From positions 62,001 through 126,000 of the IMG/VR virus record IMGVR_UViG_3300035703_000009: 64,000 nt of DNA; one strand, written 5' to 3'. Shown one piece after another: positions 7,873-25,085 of this stretch (the stretch's first letter is position 1; each line of letters begins with the position of its first letter). The translations under genes and the position numbers were made by a program. The notes beneath the pieces were generated by a model, which had not been told where the DNA came from, did not search any database, and saw only the letters and a program-made list of their open reading frames with translations.

Positions 7873-7900
7873 AAAGGCCGAGATAATCTCGGCCTTTTTT
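7873..7900. terminator. Bidirectional intrinsic terminator
   Basis: AAAGGCCGAGA-TAA-TCTCGGCCTTTTTT between convergent genes. Confidence 0.9.
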
Positions 7901-8303
7901 ATTTTACTTGAACTACTTGCACCTTTTCTATTTCCCGGATCTCGATCTCCTCTAACTCCTTTGATTTTATTAGAGTGTAATCGAACTTAATGTTCTCGTA
8001 TTGGTCCTCAATGAAGTCCAACGTGTTAAGGATCAGTGAGGTCGAAATGTTTGAGTTTAAGTAGATAACTTGCTTGTACTTTTGGTTCTTGATGTTGACC
8101 GCTTTATCTAGGAGTTTTTTGACCTCATAGTTTAGCAAAAAAGACTGTATTTTGTTTGGCACTATAAACTTAGTCTTAAACTTTTCTTTAATGATCTTGT
8201 TAACGTTAAGCACATAGTCTTCCTTGCTCTTCTTTTCAAATGCAGCAATGAAGTGTTTATACTCACGAACAAAGATTATGCTTACTGTTCTCTCTTCCAT
8301 CAT
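7899..8303 (-). CDS. Hypothetical protein
   Basis: 134 aa; ATGA overlap with the dCMP deaminase stop. Confidence 0.75.
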   Translation of the reverse strand: MMEERTVSIIFVREYKHFIAAFEKKSKEDYVLNVNKIIKEKFKTKFIVPNKIQSFLLNYEVKKLLDKAVNIKNQKYKQVIYLNSNISTSLILNTLDFIEDQYENIKFDYTLIKSKELEEIEIREIEKVQVVQVK

Positions 8304-8719
8304 ACTTCTAATTTTACGACGTCGACCCCAGCTTCCCTAAGTATCTGTAAGTTACTGACATCTCGATATTCTTCAGCATAGATCACCCGCTTGATTCCAG
8401 CTTGGATGATGAGCTTGGTGCAGTCTTTACAAGGAGAAAGTGTGACATATAGTGTCGCACCTTCGACGTTTTGAGTAGACCGAGCCACCTTTAAGATTGC
8501 ATTTGCCTCAGCATGTAATACATACCAGTGAGTGTTTCCATCGCAGTCTTCACACTCGTTATTAAAGCCTTTAGGCGTGCCATTGAAGCCGTCTGAAATA
8601 ATGGTTCCGTCTTTCACGATTATAGCGCCGACTTTTTTACGAGTACAACAAGAAAGAACAGACCATTGTTTGGCCATCTTTAAGTAAGTGATGTGGTATT
8701 TAAGCTCCTTGCTGATCAC
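8300..8719 (-). CDS. dCMP deaminase
   Basis: KVGAII, GFNGTP, HAEANAI and SPCKDC zinc motifs. Confidence 0.93.
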   Translation of the reverse strand: MISKELKYHITYLKMAKQWSVLSCCTRKKVGAIIVKDGTIISDGFNGTPKGFNNECEDCDGNTHWYVLHAEANAILKVARSTQNVEGATLYVTLSPCKDCTKLIIQAGIKRVIYAEEYRDVSNLQILREAGVDVVKLEV

Positions 8720-8909
8720 GGTTGGAAGGTTTTAGGTTATTAGGTAGGACGGCTGTCGCGATTACAATGATCGCGAGCCACTGCATGTAACTCAAGTCAA
8801 CAGCAAAGGTCTTGGCTAAGAATAGAGAATACATCACCCAGCAGATGGCGGCACAGGTGAGATACTCGAATGCTACTGGAAGGTATTTGATGAATTTAAA
8901 GTCTTTCAT
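8700..8909 (-). CDS. Small two-TM membrane protein
   Basis: Two hydrophobic segments in 69 aa. Confidence 0.65.
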   Translation of the reverse strand: MKDFKFIKYLPVAFEYLTCAAICWVMYSLFLAKTFAVDLSYMQWLAIIVIATAVLPNNLKPSNRDQQGA

Positions 8910-8910
8910 G

Positions 8911-9777
8911 TTATTGGATGTTTGTGTGGATCCACTTTAGCAGAGGATCTTCTAGTAATTTAGGATCAGGATTTTTAAAGTCTGCAAAGAACTTAATTAA
9001 GTCGGAAGTAGGGTCCCCGTTCTCACTTATGAGGTTGACACCTACTGCTGGGATAGATTCTGGCACAAGTTCAGAGGTCAGCATCTTTTCGATTGCCTCA
9101 AAATGGTGCTCATAGATGTGAAACGAGTTATCGATGTGAGTGTATGTGCCCATCTCTAAGTCCGGATAGTGCGGTTTTAGGTGAGCAAGTGCCTGTGATT
9201 GCAAGACGGTAAAAAAAGCCAAGTCAGTCGGTAGTCCCCAAATCACGTCATTACTGCGCATTGAAATGGTGAGGTTGAGCTTGTTTTCACGAATATGAAA
9301 GATTCCATACATGGTGCACACAAAATCCCGGTTTGAGCGATACTGATGTTTTGGCAAGTTAAAGTGCATGATGGCTTGTCGCGAGTCCTTGTCCTTGATT
9401 AGGGAAGAGATCGCCCAGTCATACTGGCTAAAATCATGGTCATTGAGCTCGGTAAAAAGAAGGTTGCCATACGACGAATTTACCGTACCGTCATAGTTTT
9501 GAATGGTCGTCCAGAACTTGGCATACTCAGAGATGAAGTCGGCGTCGTTGCGTCCCATAAAATACCACAGCAGCTCAGCGGCGATGTATTTCTTTTGGGA
9601 AGACCTAAATTGATTTGAATATAGACATGACAGCGGATCCTCTAAGATCAGGACAGTATTGATGTTTTCCTTAACTAGCAGATCTCGAGGTCTGGTCTCG
9701 TATTCTGGGTTAGTCATTAGCTCATGTAGGCTTTCTCCATATACTGATGCAAAACTCTTGTCTTTATATACACGCAT
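8911..9777 (-). CDS. Thymidylate-synthase-family enzyme, T4 gp42 (dCMP hydroxymethylase)-like
   Basis: VNSSYG, DSRQAI, catalytic DFVCT, MRSNDVIWGLPTD, SFHIYE; start moved to 9777 because the upstream ATG lies inside the promoter motif. Confidence 0.85.
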   Translation of the reverse strand: MRVYKDKSFASVYGESLHELMTNPEYETRPRDLLVKENINTVLILEDPLSCLYSNQFRSSQKKYIAAELLWYFMGRNDADFISEYAKFWTTIQNYDGTVNSSYGNLLFTELNDHDFSQYDWAISSLIKDKDSRQAIMHFNLPKHQYRSNRDFVCTMYGIFHIRENKLNLTISMRSNDVIWGLPTDLAFFTVLQSQALAHLKPHYPDLEMGTYTHIDNSFHIYEHHFEAIEKMLTSELVPESIPAVGVNLISENGDPTSDLIKFFADFKNPDPKLLEDPLLKWIHTNIQ

Positions 9778-9796
9778 AGTCTTAGTATTTGACTTT

Positions 9797-9823
9797 TTAT
9801 ACATGGCATCGCACTACAAGTTT
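9797..9823 (-). promoter_or_regulatory. Bipartite promoter AAACT-N16-GTATAA
   Basis: Exact match to the recurring motif. Confidence 0.65.
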
Positions 9824-9835
9824 TAATCTCGACAA

Positions 9836-9843
9836 ATAAATAA
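9836..9843 (+). promoter_or_regulatory. Putative late promoter ATAAATAA
   Basis: Upstream of the plus-strand operon starting at 9858. Confidence 0.6.
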
Positions 9844-9857
9844 ATAAAATAGAATAG

Positions 9858-10226
9858 ATGTCTCTACAAAAGGTTTGGATAAAATGGGGTCAATTGAATG
9901 TTCAGTGGGGAGCAATCAACCTGACGTGGAGCGAGATCTATACGTATCTTGAAATAGCGAAAGGCAGTGGAGCCGGTGGAATAATAGTTGATCCAGAAAA
10001 AGTATGGAGCAGCGTTGATGCTGACCTAAAGAAACAAGGATACGATAAGGATACTCGAGAAAAGTTTTTAAAGGTAGTGGTCAAGGTAAATGGACTTGAA
10101 ACTGACTCTTCTAGAAAAATGGAGAGCATTAAAAAGTCGATCACTGTCGACCACATTAAAAATACGATAGCTAAGGTGACTCCTGAAGTAAGAGTTCACG
10201 CGATACAGGTTAAAAGAAATGGGTAA
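9858..10226 (+). CDS. Hypothetical late protein
   Basis: 122 aa; Trp-rich N-terminus. Confidence 0.75.
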   Translation: MSLQKVWIKWGQLNVQWGAINLTWSEIYTYLEIAKGSGAGGIIVDPEKVWSSVDADLKKQGYDKDTREKFLKVVVKVNGLETDSSRKMESIKKSITVDHIKNTIAKVTPEVRVHAIQVKRNG

Positions 10227-10986
10227 GAACTTTAATTCTTTTTCAGAACTGATTAAGGGTCGATCTGAGTCGGGTTTTAAATCATTTAAAGACCTCGCGA
10301 GCAAAATATCGACTGTCCCAGGTGCCGCACCTGTGCAAGAAAACATAGAAACTCCTCAAGTCGATCTAAACATCGAGGTCGACACTCAAGAGGACAAGTC
10401 AGTAGTTTCTAACCTAATTGAAAAGCTTTTAGAGTCTGACGACTCAAGCCAGACTCCTATAAATGAGAGCCTTTCTCAAGCAGAAACTGACCTGCCATTA
10501 GAAGGCAAGAACCTAGAAGAAGCCCTTGCGACTCTAATAAAAAGAATCGATGGGCTCTCAACAGGCATGCCGGTTACGCCAGAGGTCTTGCCAGAGCCAG
10601 TAAAAGAAGCACGACCTGAAGAACCAAACAAAGCATATAGAGTATTTAGAGATATAGACGAGACATTTGAGTGTAATCTAACAGTTGAAGGAACTAGCTT
10701 AGCTAATTCTAAAGTAAGACTTGTGCTCGAATCTGATGCATGGAACTTTGTGTTTTATGGCAAAGTGTACGGAGACGGCAAGTGTGTCGTTCCAATAAAA
10801 AAAGGTATTCCACTAGTGGAAGGAGCTACTGGAAAGATTAAATTAGAGGTAATTGCAGAAGAACAACTTTTCATAGGTTGGGAAGACAACTTTAAAATCG
10901 CTGCCTCCAAAAAGGTAAAAGTTGACCTAAAGGAGCAAAAAGCAGTTAAGGTCAGTTTTAACAAGCCGCTCAATGAAAAAGGATAA
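10219..10986 (+). CDS. Hypothetical late protein with beta-rich C-terminal domain
   Basis: 255 aa; low-complexity N-terminal half. Confidence 0.75.
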   Translation: MGKNFNSFSELIKGRSESGFKSFKDLASKISTVPGAAPVQENIETPQVDLNIEVDTQEDKSVVSNLIEKLLESDDSSQTPINESLSQAETDLPLEGKNLEEALATLIKRIDGLSTGMPVTPEVLPEPVKEARPEEPNKAYRVFRDIDETFECNLTVEGTSLANSKVRLVLESDAWNFVFYGKVYGDGKCVVPIKKGIPLVEGATGKIKLEVIAEEQLFIGWEDNFKIAASKKVKVDLKEQKAVKVSFNKPLNEKG

Positions 10987-10995
10987 TTTTAACGC

Positions 10996-11796
10996 ATGCC
11001 AACACTTGATTTAACGAACGTTAACGTATCTGCTTCTTTTCAAAGGCTACTACAGATCGACGATGCTGGAAACCAGTACAATGGTGCAGGCTCATTAATT
11101 AATACGCTAAGAATTCAAAAGACAATCTATCCAGAAATTAACTTTGCTGGAATAGACTATACTGTGATTCCTAACGGATCGTACATGATTGGATTTGATT
11201 CGGGAGCAGGCGGCAAGTTAGTGAAGTTAGATAACTCAGGCTCAATAACTGTCATAGAAGGTGCAGGAGGCGGAGGAATCATCACCAGTATATCAGACAC
11301 GAACACTGTCGACCTTGCGATAATTAGCGGAGACCTGTCGGCAGTAATTAAATATCAAAACTCTCCAGACATCGTGTTAAGTAGCGATGCCTCAGGCTTG
11401 ATCGCGAGCTTCGCTTCTGCCAATATTAGTCAGTTTACTAATAACACAGGATATACAACTTTATCTTCTTTTTCATCTGGTACAGGTATTTCTTATGATA
11501 ATCTTACAGGAGTAATAACTAACTCTGCTCCTGATCAAACTGTAGTATTAACTCCTGGAACAAATATAGGCATAAGTGGTACTTATCCAAGCTTTACAAT
11601 AAATGGATTAAATTCTGAAAGAAGAAATGACTGGGTAGCACCTTATTCTTATTGCGGTTCAGCTCCAAATGGTTCAGCAGAATCAGCATCAGTGTGGACA
11701 ATATATAGAATACAAGTAGCAAGTGATGGAACGGTGACTACATTATCAGCTACCAATGTAAAATGGACAGACAGATATACAACAATTTATACATAA
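10996..11796 (+). CDS. Tail-fibre-like structural protein, apparently chimeric
   Basis: G/S/T-rich fibre motifs (GTGISYDNLTGVIT, GTNIGISGTYPSFTI); codon usage changes mid-gene. Confidence 0.6.
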   Translation: MPTLDLTNVNVSASFQRLLQIDDAGNQYNGAGSLINTLRIQKTIYPEINFAGIDYTVIPNGSYMIGFDSGAGGKLVKLDNSGSITVIEGAGGGGIITSISDTNTVDLAIISGDLSAVIKYQNSPDIVLSSDASGLIASFASANISQFTNNTGYTTLSSFSSGTGISYDNLTGVITNSAPDQTVVLTPGTNIGISGTYPSFTINGLNSERRNDWVAPYSYCGSAPNGSAESASVWTIYRIQVASDGTVTTLSATNVKWTDRYTTIYT

Positions 11797-11809
11797 AAAT
11801 AAAAAAACT

Positions 11810-12106
11810 ATGCCTTTAATAAGCACACAACCTGTAACAGTAGACGGAAAAGAATATCCATTTTTAGCATTAAATATGGCTGTAAGTCCATTTTGGCAAC
11901 CTGAATATGTAGGAGGTTCAATAGCTTTGAGATTTACTCCATTCAGATATGACGAAAATCACAATGTAGAGAAATTAGAAAATCCTGATTATCAGAAAGT
12001 AATTTCTATGATGGATGTTTTTGATAATGGAACATCTCAGGAAAAAGATATTGCAAATAAAATAATGCTACAAATTCAAGAATTAATTAATTATAAAGGT
12101 TTTTAA
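11810..12106 (+). CDS. Hypothetical protein, possible fibre assembly factor
   Basis: 98 aa, between fibre-like genes in the AT-rich cassette. Confidence 0.7.
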   Translation: MPLISTQPVTVDGKEYPFLALNMAVSPFWQPEYVGGSIALRFTPFRYDENHNVEKLENPDYQKVISMMDVFDNGTSQEKDIANKIMLQIQELINYKGF

Positions 12107-13275
12107 TGGCAACTATAACATCAGCAGCAACAGGCAATTGGAGTAATACAGCAACTTGGGTTGGTGGAGTTGTACCTACAACAGTTGATGATGTTGTAAT
12201 AGGAGCAGGACATACTGTAACTTTAGATGTTAATGCTACTATACTTACGTTAACAGGTGCTGCAAATACAGCTTCAAATTTAGCTATAACAACAAGTAGA
12301 ACATTTACTTGTACCGCTGCAAATGGTATTACACAAAAGTCTATTAGTAACTCGACAGCGGGTTTAGTAGAAATATCAGGTGTTGGAATAACAGTAAATA
12401 TAAATGCTAATATTAGAAATATAAACGATTCATTAAGTAGTTCGGCAATAAGAATTGTTAGTATTTGTACTGTGAATATAGTTGGTAATGTTACAAATAC
12501 AGCACCAAGAAGTGCTTCAAGCGCAACAATTACACCAACTATATCTATATCCGCAGGAGCAACAGTAAATATTTTAGGGGATGTTATTTGCAATCCAGCA
12601 ACTGTTGGTGCAATTAACTTTGTTTGTATTCTTGCTAATAATAATGCTACAATAAACATTACAGGTAATTTAAGTTCAGGTATATTAACAACAGGTCAAA
12701 ATGCTATTTTAAATAATACAACTGCAATTACAATTAATGTAACAGGTAATGTCACAGCAAATTTAGCAACTGTAATTAATTCTAATCAATCATCAACAAT
12801 AACAGTAGTTGGTACAATAACTGCAAGTAATTCAGCAGTTGGTATAAATATGTCATCAGGAAATATTACAATATCCACACCTTGTCTAAATGCAACAAAT
12901 GGTGTAATGGCAGTATTATCTCCAAATGTAAAAATATACAGTAGTGCAATTGCAAGTTGGAGATTTTTAACAGATATTCCAGCAACTAATAAATTTCTTT
13001 ATTCAGCAGGCGTAGCACTTGGCAACCCAGTAATAGCGAATGTTAGAGATGGAACAGTTTATGGTGCATCAAATGAATTAACAGGCTCATTAATTATGGC
13101 AGTACCAAGTGATGTAAGAAAAAGTGTCCCTACAGATGCAACAGTTGGAACAGCAGATTTAACAGCACAAGACATATTTACAGAAATAGCAAATAGTTCT
13201 GACCCTATTGCTGTAAGATTAAGAAACATAGCAACAGTACAAACAACTGGAGCACAATTAGCATCATATAATTAA
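12106..13275 (+). CDS. Beta-helix adhesin / receptor-binding-like protein, paralogue 1
   Basis: GNWSNTATWVGGVVP N-terminus; repeated (I/V)NI(T/V)GN(V/L)T coils. Confidence 0.7.
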   Translation: MATITSAATGNWSNTATWVGGVVPTTVDDVVIGAGHTVTLDVNATILTLTGAANTASNLAITTSRTFTCTAANGITQKSISNSTAGLVEISGVGITVNINANIRNINDSLSSSAIRIVSICTVNIVGNVTNTAPRSASSATITPTISISAGATVNILGDVICNPATVGAINFVCILANNNATINITGNLSSGILTTGQNAILNNTTAITINVTGNVTANLATVINSNQSSTITVVGTITASNSAVGINMSSGNITISTPCLNATNGVMAVLSPNVKIYSSAIASWRFLTDIPATNKFLYSAGVALGNPVIANVRDGTVYGASNELTGSLIMAVPSDVRKSVPTDATVGTADLTAQDIFTEIANSSDPIAVRLRNIATVQTTGAQLASYN

Positions 13276-22622: not shown

Positions 22623-22916
22623 TTATTGGTTATTTTGAATGATTTTAGCTCCTGCGGTCTCAAGTGTTAGCACTAGGTTTTCCTTACGAAGCTCTTCGAC
22701 TTCTTCCTGTGCTTTCTTGATTAGGTCAGCGATCTCAATGTCGCTGGCGCCGATTGCATTTAGGACCTGAAAGGTCACATCCTCTATGTTACTCGTGCGA
22801 TAAGGCAAGACATGATATTCCTCGCCAAATTTCTTTTCTAAGCCTTCACACGCAGTCTGTACTTGCTGAACATCAGCTTTAGTCGGAAAGCCTATGATAA
22901 AAATTGGTTTTGCCAT
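22623..22916 (-). CDS. Hypothetical protein
   Basis: 97 aa; TAATG-coupled to the polymerase fragment. Confidence 0.7.
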   Translation of the reverse strand: MAKPIFIIGFPTKADVQQVQTACEGLEKKFGEEYHVLPYRTSNIEDVTFQVLNAIGASDIEIADLIKKAQEEVEELRKENLVLTLETAGAKIIQNNQ

Positions 22917-24343
22917 TACTTCTTTGCATTTTTTAAACTCTTGATCTCGCCTTGGGTTTTAATACGTTCGTCATAAAGTCTGGTCAAGATCGTACGTGCT
23001 ACTGAATCGTTTGCGCTAGAAAAAACCGTGTCGTTTTTAGTGAAGATTTCTCCACCTTTTATCTTGACCCTGTCTTTCTTACCAAGATAAGTGTCTGGCG
23101 AGATGTTGAACTGTATTTGAATATTTGGGTACATCGATGAGAAGTCATAACATGACACGTAGTTATAGTAGTCTGGGTTTGGCTTCATAACATATGCTCC
23201 CTCATAAGTTGCGTCTTCCGGTGTTCCTTCTCCCCACGGAAGTTTCATCATCTTTAGGTTCTTGTTTAAGAACTCACGACACATGAGGATCTCTGCAATA
23301 TAGACTGGGCTGAATACTTTATTGACCTCTACTTGTGCGACGTTAGCAATTGAGTAAGCCACATCAAGAAGAGAGAGCTTGTCCTCAATTAACTTAACGA
23401 GCACTACGTCGATCACATTGTAAAGAGTAAAGAGATAGGTGTCCTTTTGAAAATCAAAGAAGGTAGAGTATTTATGTTTCAGCTTGTTTGCACCGAGTAC
23501 TAGGCCGGCAATATGGTCGAGCTTGTAGTTTTCAACTACCTTGTAGGGCTTTAGCTTTTCAAACACTTGCATATAGTCTAAGACTCCTAAATGGGATGGG
23601 ATCTTGTTCTTTGACACATGAGAGCGAGAAGGCATGTTTTGCATGGAATCGAGCTTTAGGTTACGTGCACGATTCATCAGGTACTTCCAGTCAAATTCGG
23701 TCACGTTCCAGCCTGTCACAAACGATAGCTTTGGAACGATGTTATGAAAGTAGAAGCTCATCAACTCTTCTTCGCTATTGAAGTATTTGTATTTGATCTT
23801 AAACTCTTGCTGGAATAACCTGGCGTCCTCTGGTTTTAATGGAATGATCTTTCTAAAGTAGTCATTGACTTCTACTTCCATACGTGAGATCTCTTCCTGA
23901 GTTAACCCGTTTGGATGGTCATCGTCGTTTAGGATGGAAAGTATGTAGGTGACGTTGTCTTCGTTACAGAAGGAGATGAGACCGACTGGCATGCGAGCGC
24001 CTTCTGGATCTGGAAAAGAGTCATTTATTAGCTTGATCTCGATATCGAGGTAGGTCTTCTTTGGTAAGTTGTCAAAGCTGTAAATTGCTTCAAGCTCACT
24101 AGGGCTTAGTTTGTCTTGGATTAACTCTTGCACTCTAAACTGACTCACGTATTTACCTCCAGTTTGACTCTTCTTCACGAAACGACCGTCCCAGTTACGT
24201 TGCGTAGTGGCGGTCTGTGACTCAACCCAGTTGAAAAGCTCGTGATCGAGCACCCTTTTTCTGATGAAGGCTATCTTACCCGCCGCATCGTAATATGAAA
24301 TGAGTAGTGTGCCGTCTTCTAATACTTCTGAGCCTATTATCAT
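22916..24343 (-). CDS. Family B DNA polymerase, N-terminal part only (exonuclease plus motif A)
   Basis: ExoI YLDIEI, ExoII GWNVTEFD, ExoIII YNVID, YEGAYV, motif A YDFSSMYPNI; motifs B and C absent. Confidence 0.88.
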   Translation of the reverse strand: MIIGSEVLEDGTLLISYYDAAGKIAFIRKRVLDHELFNWVESQTATTQRNWDGRFVKKSQTGGKYVSQFRVQELIQDKLSPSELEAIYSFDNLPKKTYLDIEIKLINDSFPDPEGARMPVGLISFCNEDNVTYILSILNDDDHPNGLTQEEISRMEVEVNDYFRKIIPLKPEDARLFQQEFKIKYKYFNSEEELMSFYFHNIVPKLSFVTGWNVTEFDWKYLMNRARNLKLDSMQNMPSRSHVSKNKIPSHLGVLDYMQVFEKLKPYKVVENYKLDHIAGLVLGANKLKHKYSTFFDFQKDTYLFTLYNVIDVVLVKLIEDKLSLLDVAYSIANVAQVEVNKVFSPVYIAEILMCREFLNKNLKMMKLPWGEGTPEDATYEGAYVMKPNPDYYNYVSCYDFSSMYPNIQIQFNISPDTYLGKKDRVKIKGGEIFTKNDTVFSSANDSVARTILTRLYDERIKTQGEIKSLKNAKK

Positions 24344-24617: not shown

Positions 24618-25085
24618 TTAGTAGCCTCTTTTTTGACGATCGCGATTTTCTTGGTTCTTGCTCATATACATATTATACATCTCTTGAGGAGTCATGCCGA
24701 TCGAGATTGCATAGTTCATGAAAAAATGGAGCATGTCGATTATCTCGAACTTACACTCTAGCTGATCAGCCTCAGAAAGATCGCTAAATTTCATAGATTC
24801 GTACTTTGCATGGTTCTTTTTCCAGTACTTCCACACTGCATTACCGTGACCGTCCTTGATTCCACCAAGAGCATCAGTTGCTTCATGTATCTCATCAATG
24901 AGACTATGTGAATTGACGTGCCAGAAGTCCATGACCTCACGTAAAGTCATCTCGGAAAAATTGAAACCGTACACGTTTTCTTGAGTGTCCTTCTGAAGGT
25001 TCAAAATGTCGCCTAAGGTGTCAGTTGACTTAGAGTACAAGTCATTTACTTCTAAGTCTGAACATTGGTTGTCAGTATTTGCCAT
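24618..25085 (-). CDS. Dimeric all-alpha dUTPase/dCTPase (T4 gp56-like)
   Basis: DEIHE, WKYWK, KFEIIDMLHFFMN, YMSKNQENRDRQKRGY. Confidence 0.85.
   Translation of the reverse strand: MANTDNQCSDLEVNDLYSKSTDTLGDILNLQKDTQENVYGFNFSEMTLREVMDFWHVNSHSLIDEIHEATDALGGIKDGHGNAVWKYWKKNHAKYESMKFSDLSEADQLECKFEIIDMLHFFMNYAISIGMTPQEMYNMYMSKNQENRDRQKRGY

What the first reader, a model, noticed from the sequence alone, without database searches (positions are those of the whole stretch)
8300..9777. Thymidylate synthase homologue with the dCMP-specifying Asp, two genes from dCMP deaminase
Seen: MRSNDVIWGLPTD has Asp where dUMP-specific ThyA has Asn (GLPFN). DFVCT, VNSSYG and DSRQAIM match T4 gp42 (DFMCT, INSNYG, DSRRGIM). 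Known: this Asp/Asn position determines dCMP versus dUMP preference. A gp56-like dCTPase/dUTPase is also present at 24618-25085. Two inferences are possible. The phage may replace cytosine with a C5-modified base (hmC, mC or OH-C). Alternatively it may make dTMP by a non-canonical route, dCMP to 5-methyl-dCMP to dTMP, using the co-operonic deaminase.
Basis: partly seen in the sequence, partly recalled or inferred. Interest (0 to 1): 0.7.

Follow-up and report, generated by a model that had tools for sequence, protein, structure and literature searches.

The report
Phage dCMP hydroxymethylase operon (hmC DNA)
An uncultured 207-kb freshwater T4-like phage carries a thymidylate-synthase relative with all the active-site marks of the T4 enzyme that turns dCMP into 5-hydroxymethyl-dCMP, so its DNA probably holds hydroxymethylcytosine in place of cytosine; this is a new member of a well-known kind of system.

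Summary
Window 8911-9804 (-) encodes a 297-aa thymidylate-synthase (TS) homologue with Asp at the E. coli N177 position. A small membrane ORF and then a dCMP deaminase follow it. A T4 gp56-like dCTPase lies at 24618-25085 (-).

Three published diagnostic positions (E. coli L143 / D169 / N177) read D/D/D, as in T4 gp42:
- XP12 5-methyl-dCMP synthase reads N/D/D.
- RB69 5-hydroxy-dCMP synthase reads E/N/D.
- ThyA reads L/D/N.

T4 Ser94, Tyr96, Glu60 and Cys148 are kept, as are the Ser/Arg deoxyribose markers. 253 of 256 metagenomic homologues share the signature. The best fold and sequence matches are MilA and T4 dCMP hydroxymethylase.

The most likely scheme is T4-like. The dCTPase makes dCMP. 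The hydroxymethylase makes hm-dCMP. The deaminase plus ThyA make dTMP.

The operon (TS, 2-TM ORF, deaminase, 134-aa ORF) is kept in 79 of 80 related IMG/VR contigs. This is a new member of a known kind, of modest interest. Any further decoration of hmC is untested.

The parts
8911..9804 (-). TS-family enzyme, predicted dCMP hydroxymethylase (5-hm-dCMP synthase). 297 aa from the first ATG; the conserved core starts at Met10 (ATG at 9777). Key residues: E77, S110, Y112, R142, D160, C163, R183, S184, D186, D194, H229, Y231.
8700..8909 (-). Small 69-aa protein with two predicted transmembrane helices, function unknown. Its ATG follows the TS stop codon directly and its end overlaps the deaminase start.
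   Evidence: A hydrophobic ORF of 63-97 aa sits in the same place in 75 of 79 related loci. No Pfam or PHROG match. No similarity to T4 Imm.
8300..8719 (-). Short dCMP deaminase of the S-TIM5 type, 139 aa, with HAE and PCxxC zinc motifs.
   Evidence: Present downstream on the same strand in 79 of 80 related loci at a median 76% identity.
7899..8303 (-). Conserved 134-aa Lys-rich protein of unknown function. Its start overlaps the deaminase stop. The predicted alpha/beta fold weakly resembles P-loop nucleotide/APS kinases but has no Walker A motif.
   Evidence: Present in 77 of 80 related loci.
7873..7897 (.). Hairpin with an 11-bp stem (6 G-C pairs), T run after it on the + strand only (the - strand tail is GTTTTAG), lying between the end of the minus-strand operon and the end of the convergent plus-strand gene.
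24618..25085 (-). T4 gp56-like dCTPase/dUTPase (MazG-type NTP pyrophosphohydrolase), 155 aa.

Best explanation
The ORF is a T4 gp42-type deoxycytidylate hydroxymethylase. By analogy with T4 dCH (inferred), Cys163 attacks C6 of dCMP, and Asp194 reads and protonates the cytosine N3/N4 edge. The one-carbon unit of 5,10-methylene-THF is transferred to C5. The exocyclic methylene intermediate is then hydrated by a water held by Asp160 and Ser110, rather than reduced. The products are 5-hydroxymethyl-dCMP and THF.

The gene heads a tightly packed four-gene minus-strand operon: hydroxymethylase, a 2-TM peptide, a dCMP deaminase and a 134-aa unknown protein.

Together with genes elsewhere in the genome it reproduces the T4 pyrimidine scheme:
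- The gp56-like dCTPase/dUTPase converts dCTP/dCDP to dCMP.
- Part of the dCMP is hydroxymethylated.
- Part is deaminated to dUMP, which the phage's own canonical ThyA methylates to dTMP.
- A nucleotide kinase and host NDP kinase then yield hm-dCTP for the T4-like polymerase. The kinase candidate is a 198-aa TMK/dNK-like P-loop protein at genome 23182-23778.

Virion DNA is therefore predicted to carry hmC largely in place of C.

Shown here: the sequence signature, fold, phylogenetic side, gene content and operon conservation. Inferred: the activity, the product, the extent of replacement, the kinase, and any later decoration.
For: Sequence and fold matches:
- The best sequence matches in the PDB are T4 dCH (4e-20) and MilA (5e-20); ThyA scores only 1e-9 to 1e-11.
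- The AF2 model has pLDDT 97. Its best fold matches are MilA (E 7e-22, TM 0.73-0.79, covering the C-terminal helical extension) and then T4 dCH (1e-16).

Signature at E. coli L143/C146/D169/N177:
- Query D/C/D/D, identical to T4 gp42.
- XP12 N/C/D/D, RB69 gp48 E/C/N/D, SP10 dUMP hydroxymethylase D/C/D/N, E. coli and the phage's own ThyA L/C/D/N.
- 253 of 256 family members read DCDD.
- E77, S110, Y112, R142, D160, C163, R183, S184, D186, D194, H229 and Y231 are invariant in 90 diverse homologues.

Published rules:
- Asp145, Ser94 and Asp179 are the dCH signature, and D145N is inactive (PMC6400193).
- N177D means dCMP, L143D/E means a non-methyl product, and D169N means 5-hydroxy-C (PMC13326640).
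- Ser/Arg means deoxyribose and Ala/Lys means ribose (PMC5175136).

Tree: query and T4 gp42 lie inside one clade (SH-aLRT 97). ThyA plus XP12 are split off at 99.

Genome content:
- Canonical ThyA elsewhere in the genome, and in two related contigs as well.
- gp56 homologue.
- The TS-deaminase module is kept in 79 of 80 relatives.
- TS(Asp177) plus dCMP deaminase plus MazG-like co-location is experimentally linked to modified-cytosine contigs (PMC8670742; bioRxiv 2024.12.05.627091).
Against: - No enzyme assay and no base-composition data exist. All public runs holding the phage are kept as contigs only.
- No clear T4 gp1-type dNMP kinase was found. There is only a weak TMK/dNK-like candidate. 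The record is about 81% complete.
- No T4-type alpha- or beta-glucosyltransferase and no hmC carbamoyltransferase were found.
- Identity to T4 gp42 is only about 25-27%. T4 sits on a long branch in the tree, so its exact placement is unsure.
- R127 is Gln, and there is a MilA-like C-terminal extension that T4 dCH lacks.
- The residue rules rest on a few characterised enzymes.
Confidence: 0.72

Rival explanations
1. The enzyme is a dCMP methyltransferase (5-methyl-dCMP synthase, XP12 type). The neighbouring deaminase prefers 5-methyl-dC nucleotides and makes thymidine nucleotides from them. The DNA carries 5mC.
For: - Asp at the N177 position.
- TS-deaminase co-location is typical of such systems, and 5 of 7 tested TS partners made 5mdCMP (bioRxiv 2024.12.05.627091).
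- XP12 itself has TS, deaminase and DHFR side by side.
Against: - The L143-equivalent is Asp (invariant D160), as in the hydroxymethylases. XP12 has Asn there, and T4 D145N loses hydroxymethylation.
- XP12 TS groups with ThyA, away from the query.
- The genome has its own canonical ThyA, so the bypass is not needed. The preprint presents the bypass as replacing a second TS.
Confidence: 0.07
2. The enzyme is a flavin-dependent 5-hydroxy-dCMP synthase, as in RB69 gp48 and DLP3 gp80. The DNA carries glycosylated 5-hydroxycytosine.
For: - Asp at 177 and an acidic residue at 143 are shared with that class.
- The genome has many glycosyltransferases.
Against: - The diagnostic D169N change is absent: D186 is invariant in the family.
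- The two weak PDB matches 9iqc and 9iqu, labelled only 'Thymidylate synthase' and of unconfirmed identity, score 5e-7 and 9e-7, against 4e-20 for T4 dCH.
- RB69 gp48 falls outside the query's clade.
Confidence: 0.04
3. The enzyme acts on dUMP, either as a second thymidylate synthase or as a dUMP hydroxymethylase fed by the adjacent deaminase. The DNA carries T or hmU.
For: - The adjacent deaminase makes dUMP.
- SP10 dUMP hydroxymethylase scores about as well as T4 gp42 by BLAST.
- Two family members have Asn at position 177.
Against: - Asp194 is invariant in 253 of 256 members. N177D/D179N swaps change the pyrimidine preference (PMC6400193; PMC8670742).
- Position 147 is Thr as in T4, not His.
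Confidence: 0.04
4. The enzyme is a dCMP hydroxymethylase, but the co-operonic deaminase also deaminates hm-dC nucleotides. The phage would then make both hmC and hmU, or use hmU as a base for hypermodification.
For: - Seven deaminases encoded next to TS(Asp) genes produced hmdU in an hm-dC-producing E. coli strain.
- The linkage is strict, in 79 of 80 loci.
Against: - Those seven were paired with predicted methylases, not hydroxymethylases.
- A canonical ThyA needs dUMP, which gives the deaminase an ordinary role.
- The deaminase is closest to the ordinary S-TIM5 and T4 dCMP deaminases.
Confidence: 0.1

Closest known systems
T4 gp42 deoxycytidylate hydroxymethylase (PDB 1B5E, 6A9A)
   Same: - TS fold.
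- Cys, Glu and Tyr catalytic set.
- Asp at the 143-, 169- and 177-equivalent positions, and Ser94.
- Ser/Arg deoxyribose markers.
- No TS-type C-terminal tail.
- Accompanied by a gp56-like dCTPase, a dCMP deaminase and a separate ThyA in a T4-like replication background.
   Different: - Only about 25-27% identity.
- A 55-residue helical C-terminal extension.
- R127-equivalent is Gln.
- Encoded next to the deaminase, whereas T4 has it next to beta-gt and imm.
- No T4-type glucosyltransferases or gp1 kinase were detected.
MilA CMP hydroxymethylase of Streptomyces (PDB 5JNH, 5B6D)
   Same: - Best structural match over the full length, including a C-terminal helical domain.
- Asp at both the 143- and 177-equivalent positions.
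   Different: MilA has Ala176/Lys133 (ribose preference). The query has Ser184/Arg142 (deoxyribose). MilA serves antibiotic synthesis, not DNA.
XP12 5-methyl-dCMP synthase with 5mC-selective deaminases (mSCD)
   Same: Asp at position 177, and a TS gene next to a dCMP-deaminase-family gene.
   Different: - XP12 has Asn at position 143 and groups with ThyA.
- That route replaces a canonical ThyA, whereas this phage has one.
RB69 gp48 / DLP3 gp80 5-hydroxy-dCMP synthases
   Same: TS homologues with Asp177 and an acidic residue at 143. They are accompanied by a dCTPase and by TMK-like kinases.
   Different: They carry D169N and bind flavin. The query keeps Asp.
MetaGPA TS(Asp177) - dCMP deaminase - MazG/PRA-PH modules in metaviromes
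   Same: The same gene set and co-location, experimentally associated with cytosine-modified contigs.
   Different: Here the dCTPase lies 15 kb away, and the host phage is a 207-kb T4-like freshwater phage.

Membership tests
Thymidylate synthase superfamily (PF00303) | TS fold and a profile match above the curated cut-off | tested here: met
   77.1 bits against a cut-off of 24.3. AF2 model at pLDDT 97, with TS-family folds as all top matches.
Thymidylate synthase superfamily (PF00303) | Catalytic Cys (E. coli C146), Glu58, Tyr94, Arg166, His207 and Tyr209 | tested here: met
   C163, E77, Y112, R183, H229 and Y231 are invariant in 90 homologues.
dCMP hydroxymethylase (T4 gp42 type) | Asp at E. 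coli N177 / T4 D179 (cytosine specificity) | tested here: met
   D194. 253 of 256 family members have Asp.
dCMP hydroxymethylase (T4 gp42 type) | Asp/Glu three residues before the catalytic Cys (T4 D145, E. coli L143), plus Ser two residues before the catalytic Tyr (T4 S94) | tested here: met
   D160 and S110, both invariant. The rule comes from PMC6400193.
dCMP hydroxymethylase (T4 gp42 type) | Deoxyribose markers: Ser at E. coli S167 and Arg at R126 (MilA has Ala/Lys) | tested here: met
   S184 and R142, both invariant. The rule comes from PMC5175136.
dCMP hydroxymethylase (T4 gp42 type) | Lacks the ThyA C-terminal tail that seals the active site for hydride transfer | tested here: inconclusive
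   The C-terminus does not align with the ThyA tail. It is a 55-residue helical extension that superposes on MilA's extra domain. Whether it reaches the active site was not examined.
dCMP hydroxymethylase (T4 gp42 type) | Converts dCMP plus CH2-THF to 5-hm-dCMP plus THF | not testable with these tools
   Needs an enzyme assay or in vivo LC-MS.
5-hydroxy-dCMP synthase (RB69 gp48 type) | Asn at E. coli D169 | tested here: not met
   D186 is invariant, whereas RB69 gp48 has Asn in that column. The rule comes from PMC13326640.
5-methyl-dCMP synthase (XP12 type) | Asp177 with a non-acidic residue at position 143, and kinship with the ThyA lineage | tested here: not met
   The query has Asp at 143 and XP12 has Asn. 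XP12 groups with ThyA at SH-aLRT 99, apart from the query.
Canonical ThyA | Asn177, Leu143 and His147 | tested here: not met
   The query reads D, D and T. The phage's other TS gene (L001:1486-2610) reads N, L and H.
T4-type hmC replacement pathway | dCTPase (gp56), dCMP deaminase and a separate thymidylate synthase | tested here: met
   gp56-like; deaminase; ThyA.
T4-type hmC replacement pathway | hm-dCMP-accepting dNMP kinase (gp1) | tested here: inconclusive
   No BLAST hit. phrog_139 matched only the P-loop of a different 142-aa APS-kinase-like protein (G000 183956-184384). A 198-aa TMK/dNK-like P-loop protein is a candidate. The record is 81% complete.
T4-type hmC replacement pathway | hmC glucosyltransferases (alpha-gt, beta-gt) | tested here: not met
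   PF09198 and PF11440 are absent and BLAST gives no hit. Other GT families are present.

The most novel reading that the evidence does not exclude
The hmC made by this enzyme may be only a handle. The 14-kb sugar-nucleotide, glycosyltransferase and FkbM-methyltransferase island elsewhere in the genome (six or more GTs of families not yet known to act on DNA) would build a new, possibly methylated, oligosaccharide on hmC. The conserved 2-TM peptide and the Walker-A-less kinase-like protein in the operon would be new accessory parts of the pathway.
Probability: 0.12. Interest if true: 0.65.

Novelty: new member of a known kind. Interest (0 to 1): 0.3.

Why it matters
- It extends the T4-style hydroxymethylcytosine pathway to a widespread clade of uncultured freshwater T4-like phages around 200 kb, distant from Straboviridae. 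The phage is seen in 20 lake, freshwater and subsurface metagenome runs.
- It gives a case where three published residue rules agree on the product.
- It shows that TS(Asp)-deaminase adjacency does not by itself mean the 5mC-to-T bypass.
- In practice, DNA of these phages may resist restriction enzymes and may be under-represented or mis-called in some sequencing workflows. The enzyme and its deaminase are candidates for nucleotide-modification tools.

Tried and rejected
- Megablast of the region against GenBank phages found no match.
- The search for related loci with the 90-sequence alignment failed because no conserved stretch was usable. The single protein worked.
It was rebuilt without that row.
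- BLAST of T4 gp1, alpha-gt and beta-gt and of the RB69 cluster proteins against all ORFs gave nothing.
- phrog_139 (dNMP kinase) gave only a P-loop match.
- DHFR, ThyX, carbamoyltransferase and the T4 GT families are absent.
- T4 Imm against the 2-TM ORF showed no similarity.
- For the 134-aa ORF, the Atlas search gave nothing and the fold searches gave only weak matches to P-loop-kinase-like folds (E about 1e-3, TM about 0.5).
- Sequencing runs are held only as contigs, so no read-level sign of modification could be sought.
- The glycan island is not conserved in five related long contigs: GT2 in 0 of 5 and FkbM in 2 of 5. It cannot be tied to the TS gene by co-occurrence.
- PHROG scans of ten large ORFs at 148-181 kb found only structural and lysis genes and unknowns.
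Full report
**Setting.** The window is bases 62001-126000 of a 207,110-bp IMG/VR virus record: linear, about 81% complete, 42% G+C. The window encodes T4-like replication and structural genes. These are the topoisomerase II large subunit, a helicase, gp46/47-like SbcCD, a gp41-like helicase, UvsX, a family-B polymerase piece and a tail sheath. By topoisomerase, the nearest GenBank phages are uncultured megaphages (54-56% identity), Ralstonia phage RsoM2USA, Xanthomonas phages X1 and BUDD, and Pseudomonas phage pf16 (37-45%). Near-identical sequence occurs in 20 lake-water, freshwater and subsurface metagenome runs, all kept as contigs.

**The observation.** It holds.
- ORF 8911..9804 (-) is 297 aa and contains all the quoted motifs.
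- It matches PF00303 and four PHROG 'thymidylate synthase' families.
- In the PDB its best sequence matches are T4 dCMP hydroxymethylase (4e-20) and MilA CMP hydroxymethylase (5e-20). ThyA proteins follow at 1e-11 to 1e-9.
- Downstream on the same strand lie a 69-aa ORF, a 139-aa dCMP deaminase and a 134-aa ORF. They abut or overlap one another. An 11-bp-stem hairpin at 7873-7897 closes the unit.
- The gene at 24618..25085 (-) is a full-length homologue of T4 gp56 (31% identity, 1e-23).

**What the enzyme is.** I aligned it with references fetched from annotated records: T4 gp42, RB69 gp48, XP12 TS, SP10 dUMP hydroxymethylase, E. coli ThyA and the phage's own ThyA. Three published diagnostic positions separate the known chemistries.
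- E. coli N177 to Asp gives dCMP specificity (PMC8670742; PMC6400193).
- L143 to Asp/Glu marks enzymes that add water or oxygen rather than hydride. T4 Asp145, with Ser94, holds the substrate water, and D145N is inactive (PMC13326640).
- D169 to Asn marks the flavin-dependent 5-hydroxy-dCMP synthases.

The readings at L143/D169/N177 are:

| Enzyme | L143 / D169 / N177 |
|---|---|
| Query | D / D / D |
| T4 gp42 | D / D / D |
| XP12 TS | N / D / D |
| RB69 gp48 | E / N / D |
| SP10 dUMP hydroxymethylase | D / D / N |
| E. coli ThyA and the phage's own ThyA | L / D / N |

Further points:
- The T4 Ser94 equivalent (S110) is present, and position 147 is Thr as in T4.
- MilA's ribose markers (Ala176/Lys133) are replaced by the deoxyribose markers Ser184/Arg142.
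- All these residues are invariant in an alignment of 90 homologues down to about 32% identity.
- 253 of 256 collected family members share the D-C-D-D signature.
- A maximum-likelihood tree splits ThyA plus XP12 from everything else (SH-aLRT 99). It places the query and T4 gp42 inside one clade (97), though T4 sits on a long branch.
- The AF2 model is very confident (pLDDT 97.2).
- Its best fold matches are MilA over the full length, including the C-terminal helical extension, then T4 dCH, then ThyA.

**Genomic context.** The genome encodes a full canonical ThyA (374 aa, 290 bits) with GLPFNIASY and Leu143. There is no ThyX and no DHFR. Two related contigs of 216 kb and 139 kb also carry both TS genes. 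The phage therefore has the ordinary dUMP-to-dTMP step, and the deaminase has its ordinary job of supplying dUMP. The deaminase is closest to the cyanophage S-TIM5 enzyme (2e-39) and to T4 cd (9e-26).

The published 5mC-deaminase bypass is described as replacing a second TS, which is not the situation here.

In 79 of 80 related IMG/VR loci (54-67% identical TS) the deaminase follows the TS gene on the same strand at 96-428 nt. In 75 of those 79, a hydrophobic two-helix ORF of 63-97 aa fills the gap. In 77 of 80 the 134-aa ORF is also present.

**The rest of the pathway.**
- No T4 gp1 homologue was found.
- A 198-aa P-loop protein at genome 23182-23778 resembles thymidylate and deoxynucleoside kinases (phrog_761 at 1e-5; Atlas feature score 0.95-0.98).
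- TMK-like kinases accompany TS homologues in DLP3, RB69 and RL38J1, so this is a reasonable but unproven candidate.
- T4-type glucosyltransferases and the hmC carbamoyltransferase are absent.

**Glycan island.** At genome 38150-51765, outside the window, a minus-strand run encodes:
- an NAD-dependent epimerase/dehydratase;
- a UDP-glucose/GDP-mannose dehydrogenase;
- a cytidylyltransferase;
- NAD synthase;
- three FkbM-type methyltransferases, one of them a weak, sub-cut-off match (20.6 bits against 22.7);
- glycosyltransferases of families 2 (two), 25 (two) and 11, plus a GT29-like protein.

LPS-like GTs acting on DNA have a precedent. However, the known DNA GTs are GT-B enzymes, and the island is not conserved in five related contigs. 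Its link to DNA is speculation. Virion or host-surface glycosylation is at least as likely.

**Unknown operon members.** The 134-aa protein is highly conserved, with 33 invariant columns. It models at pLDDT 84 as an alpha/beta fold with weak likeness to P-loop kinases such as APS kinase, T4 PNK and dCK (E about 1e-3, TM about 0.5). It has no Walker A motif. Its role is unknown. The 2-TM peptide has no detectable relatives outside the clade.

**Verdict.** The first inference is supported and sharpened to hmC. The second is a real mechanism, but the genome's own ThyA and the Asp160 signature argue against it. This is a new, divergent member of the dCMP hydroxymethylase family in a T4-like pyrimidine scheme. 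It is well precedented (T4, and the MetaGPA studies) and of modest interest. All functional statements are inferences from sequence, fold and context. No assay or base-composition data were available.

Noticed in passing
L011:18150-19921 and L012:691-11765 (genome 38150-51765, outside the window): A 14-kb minus-strand glycan island. It encodes an epimerase/dehydratase, UDP-Glc/GDP-Man dehydrogenase, cytidylyltransferase, NAD synthase, three FkbM methyltransferases (one a weak, sub-cut-off match), GT2 (two), GT25 (two), GT11, a GT29-like protein and several unknowns. It is not conserved in five related contigs. Its target (DNA, virion or host surface) is unknown.
   Followed up: partly
L001:1486-2610 (genome 176221-177345): A canonical ThyA of 374 aa, about 110 aa longer than E. 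coli ThyA because of two insertions (after W80 and before the RS(V)D motif). DNA ligase lies just upstream.
   Followed up: partly
window 8700-8909 (-): A small two-transmembrane-helix protein wedged between the hydroxymethylase and the deaminase. It is conserved in position in 75 of 79 relatives, with a C...Y...F...Y.QW motif. A membrane peptide inside a nucleotide-metabolism operon is unexplained.
   Followed up: partly
window 7899-8303 (-): A 134-aa Lys-rich protein, always the last gene of the operon. Its predicted fold weakly resembles P-loop kinases, but the P-loop is missing.
   Followed up: partly
L011:3182-3778 (+) with L011:2625-3185 (+): A 198-aa TMK/dNK-like P-loop protein next to a HAD-family phosphatase-like protein. 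It is a possible kinase for modified dNMPs.
   Followed up: partly
window 22916-24343 (-): The DNA polymerase match covers only 475 aa, about the N-terminal half of a family-B polymerase profile. The polymerase may be split into two genes.
   Followed up: no
L012:11831-12826 (+), L010:18735-19523 (+), L012:4377-5138 (-): Host-like auxiliary genes: a full DnaJ (J domain plus C-terminal domain), PhoH and NAD synthase.
   Followed up: no
window 8300-12300: 31-mers of this stretch occur at 50-66% share in about 19 lake-water or freshwater metagenome runs from many studies (2018-2025), and at 100% in one subsurface run. The phage clade is widespread in fresh water.
   Followed up: partly
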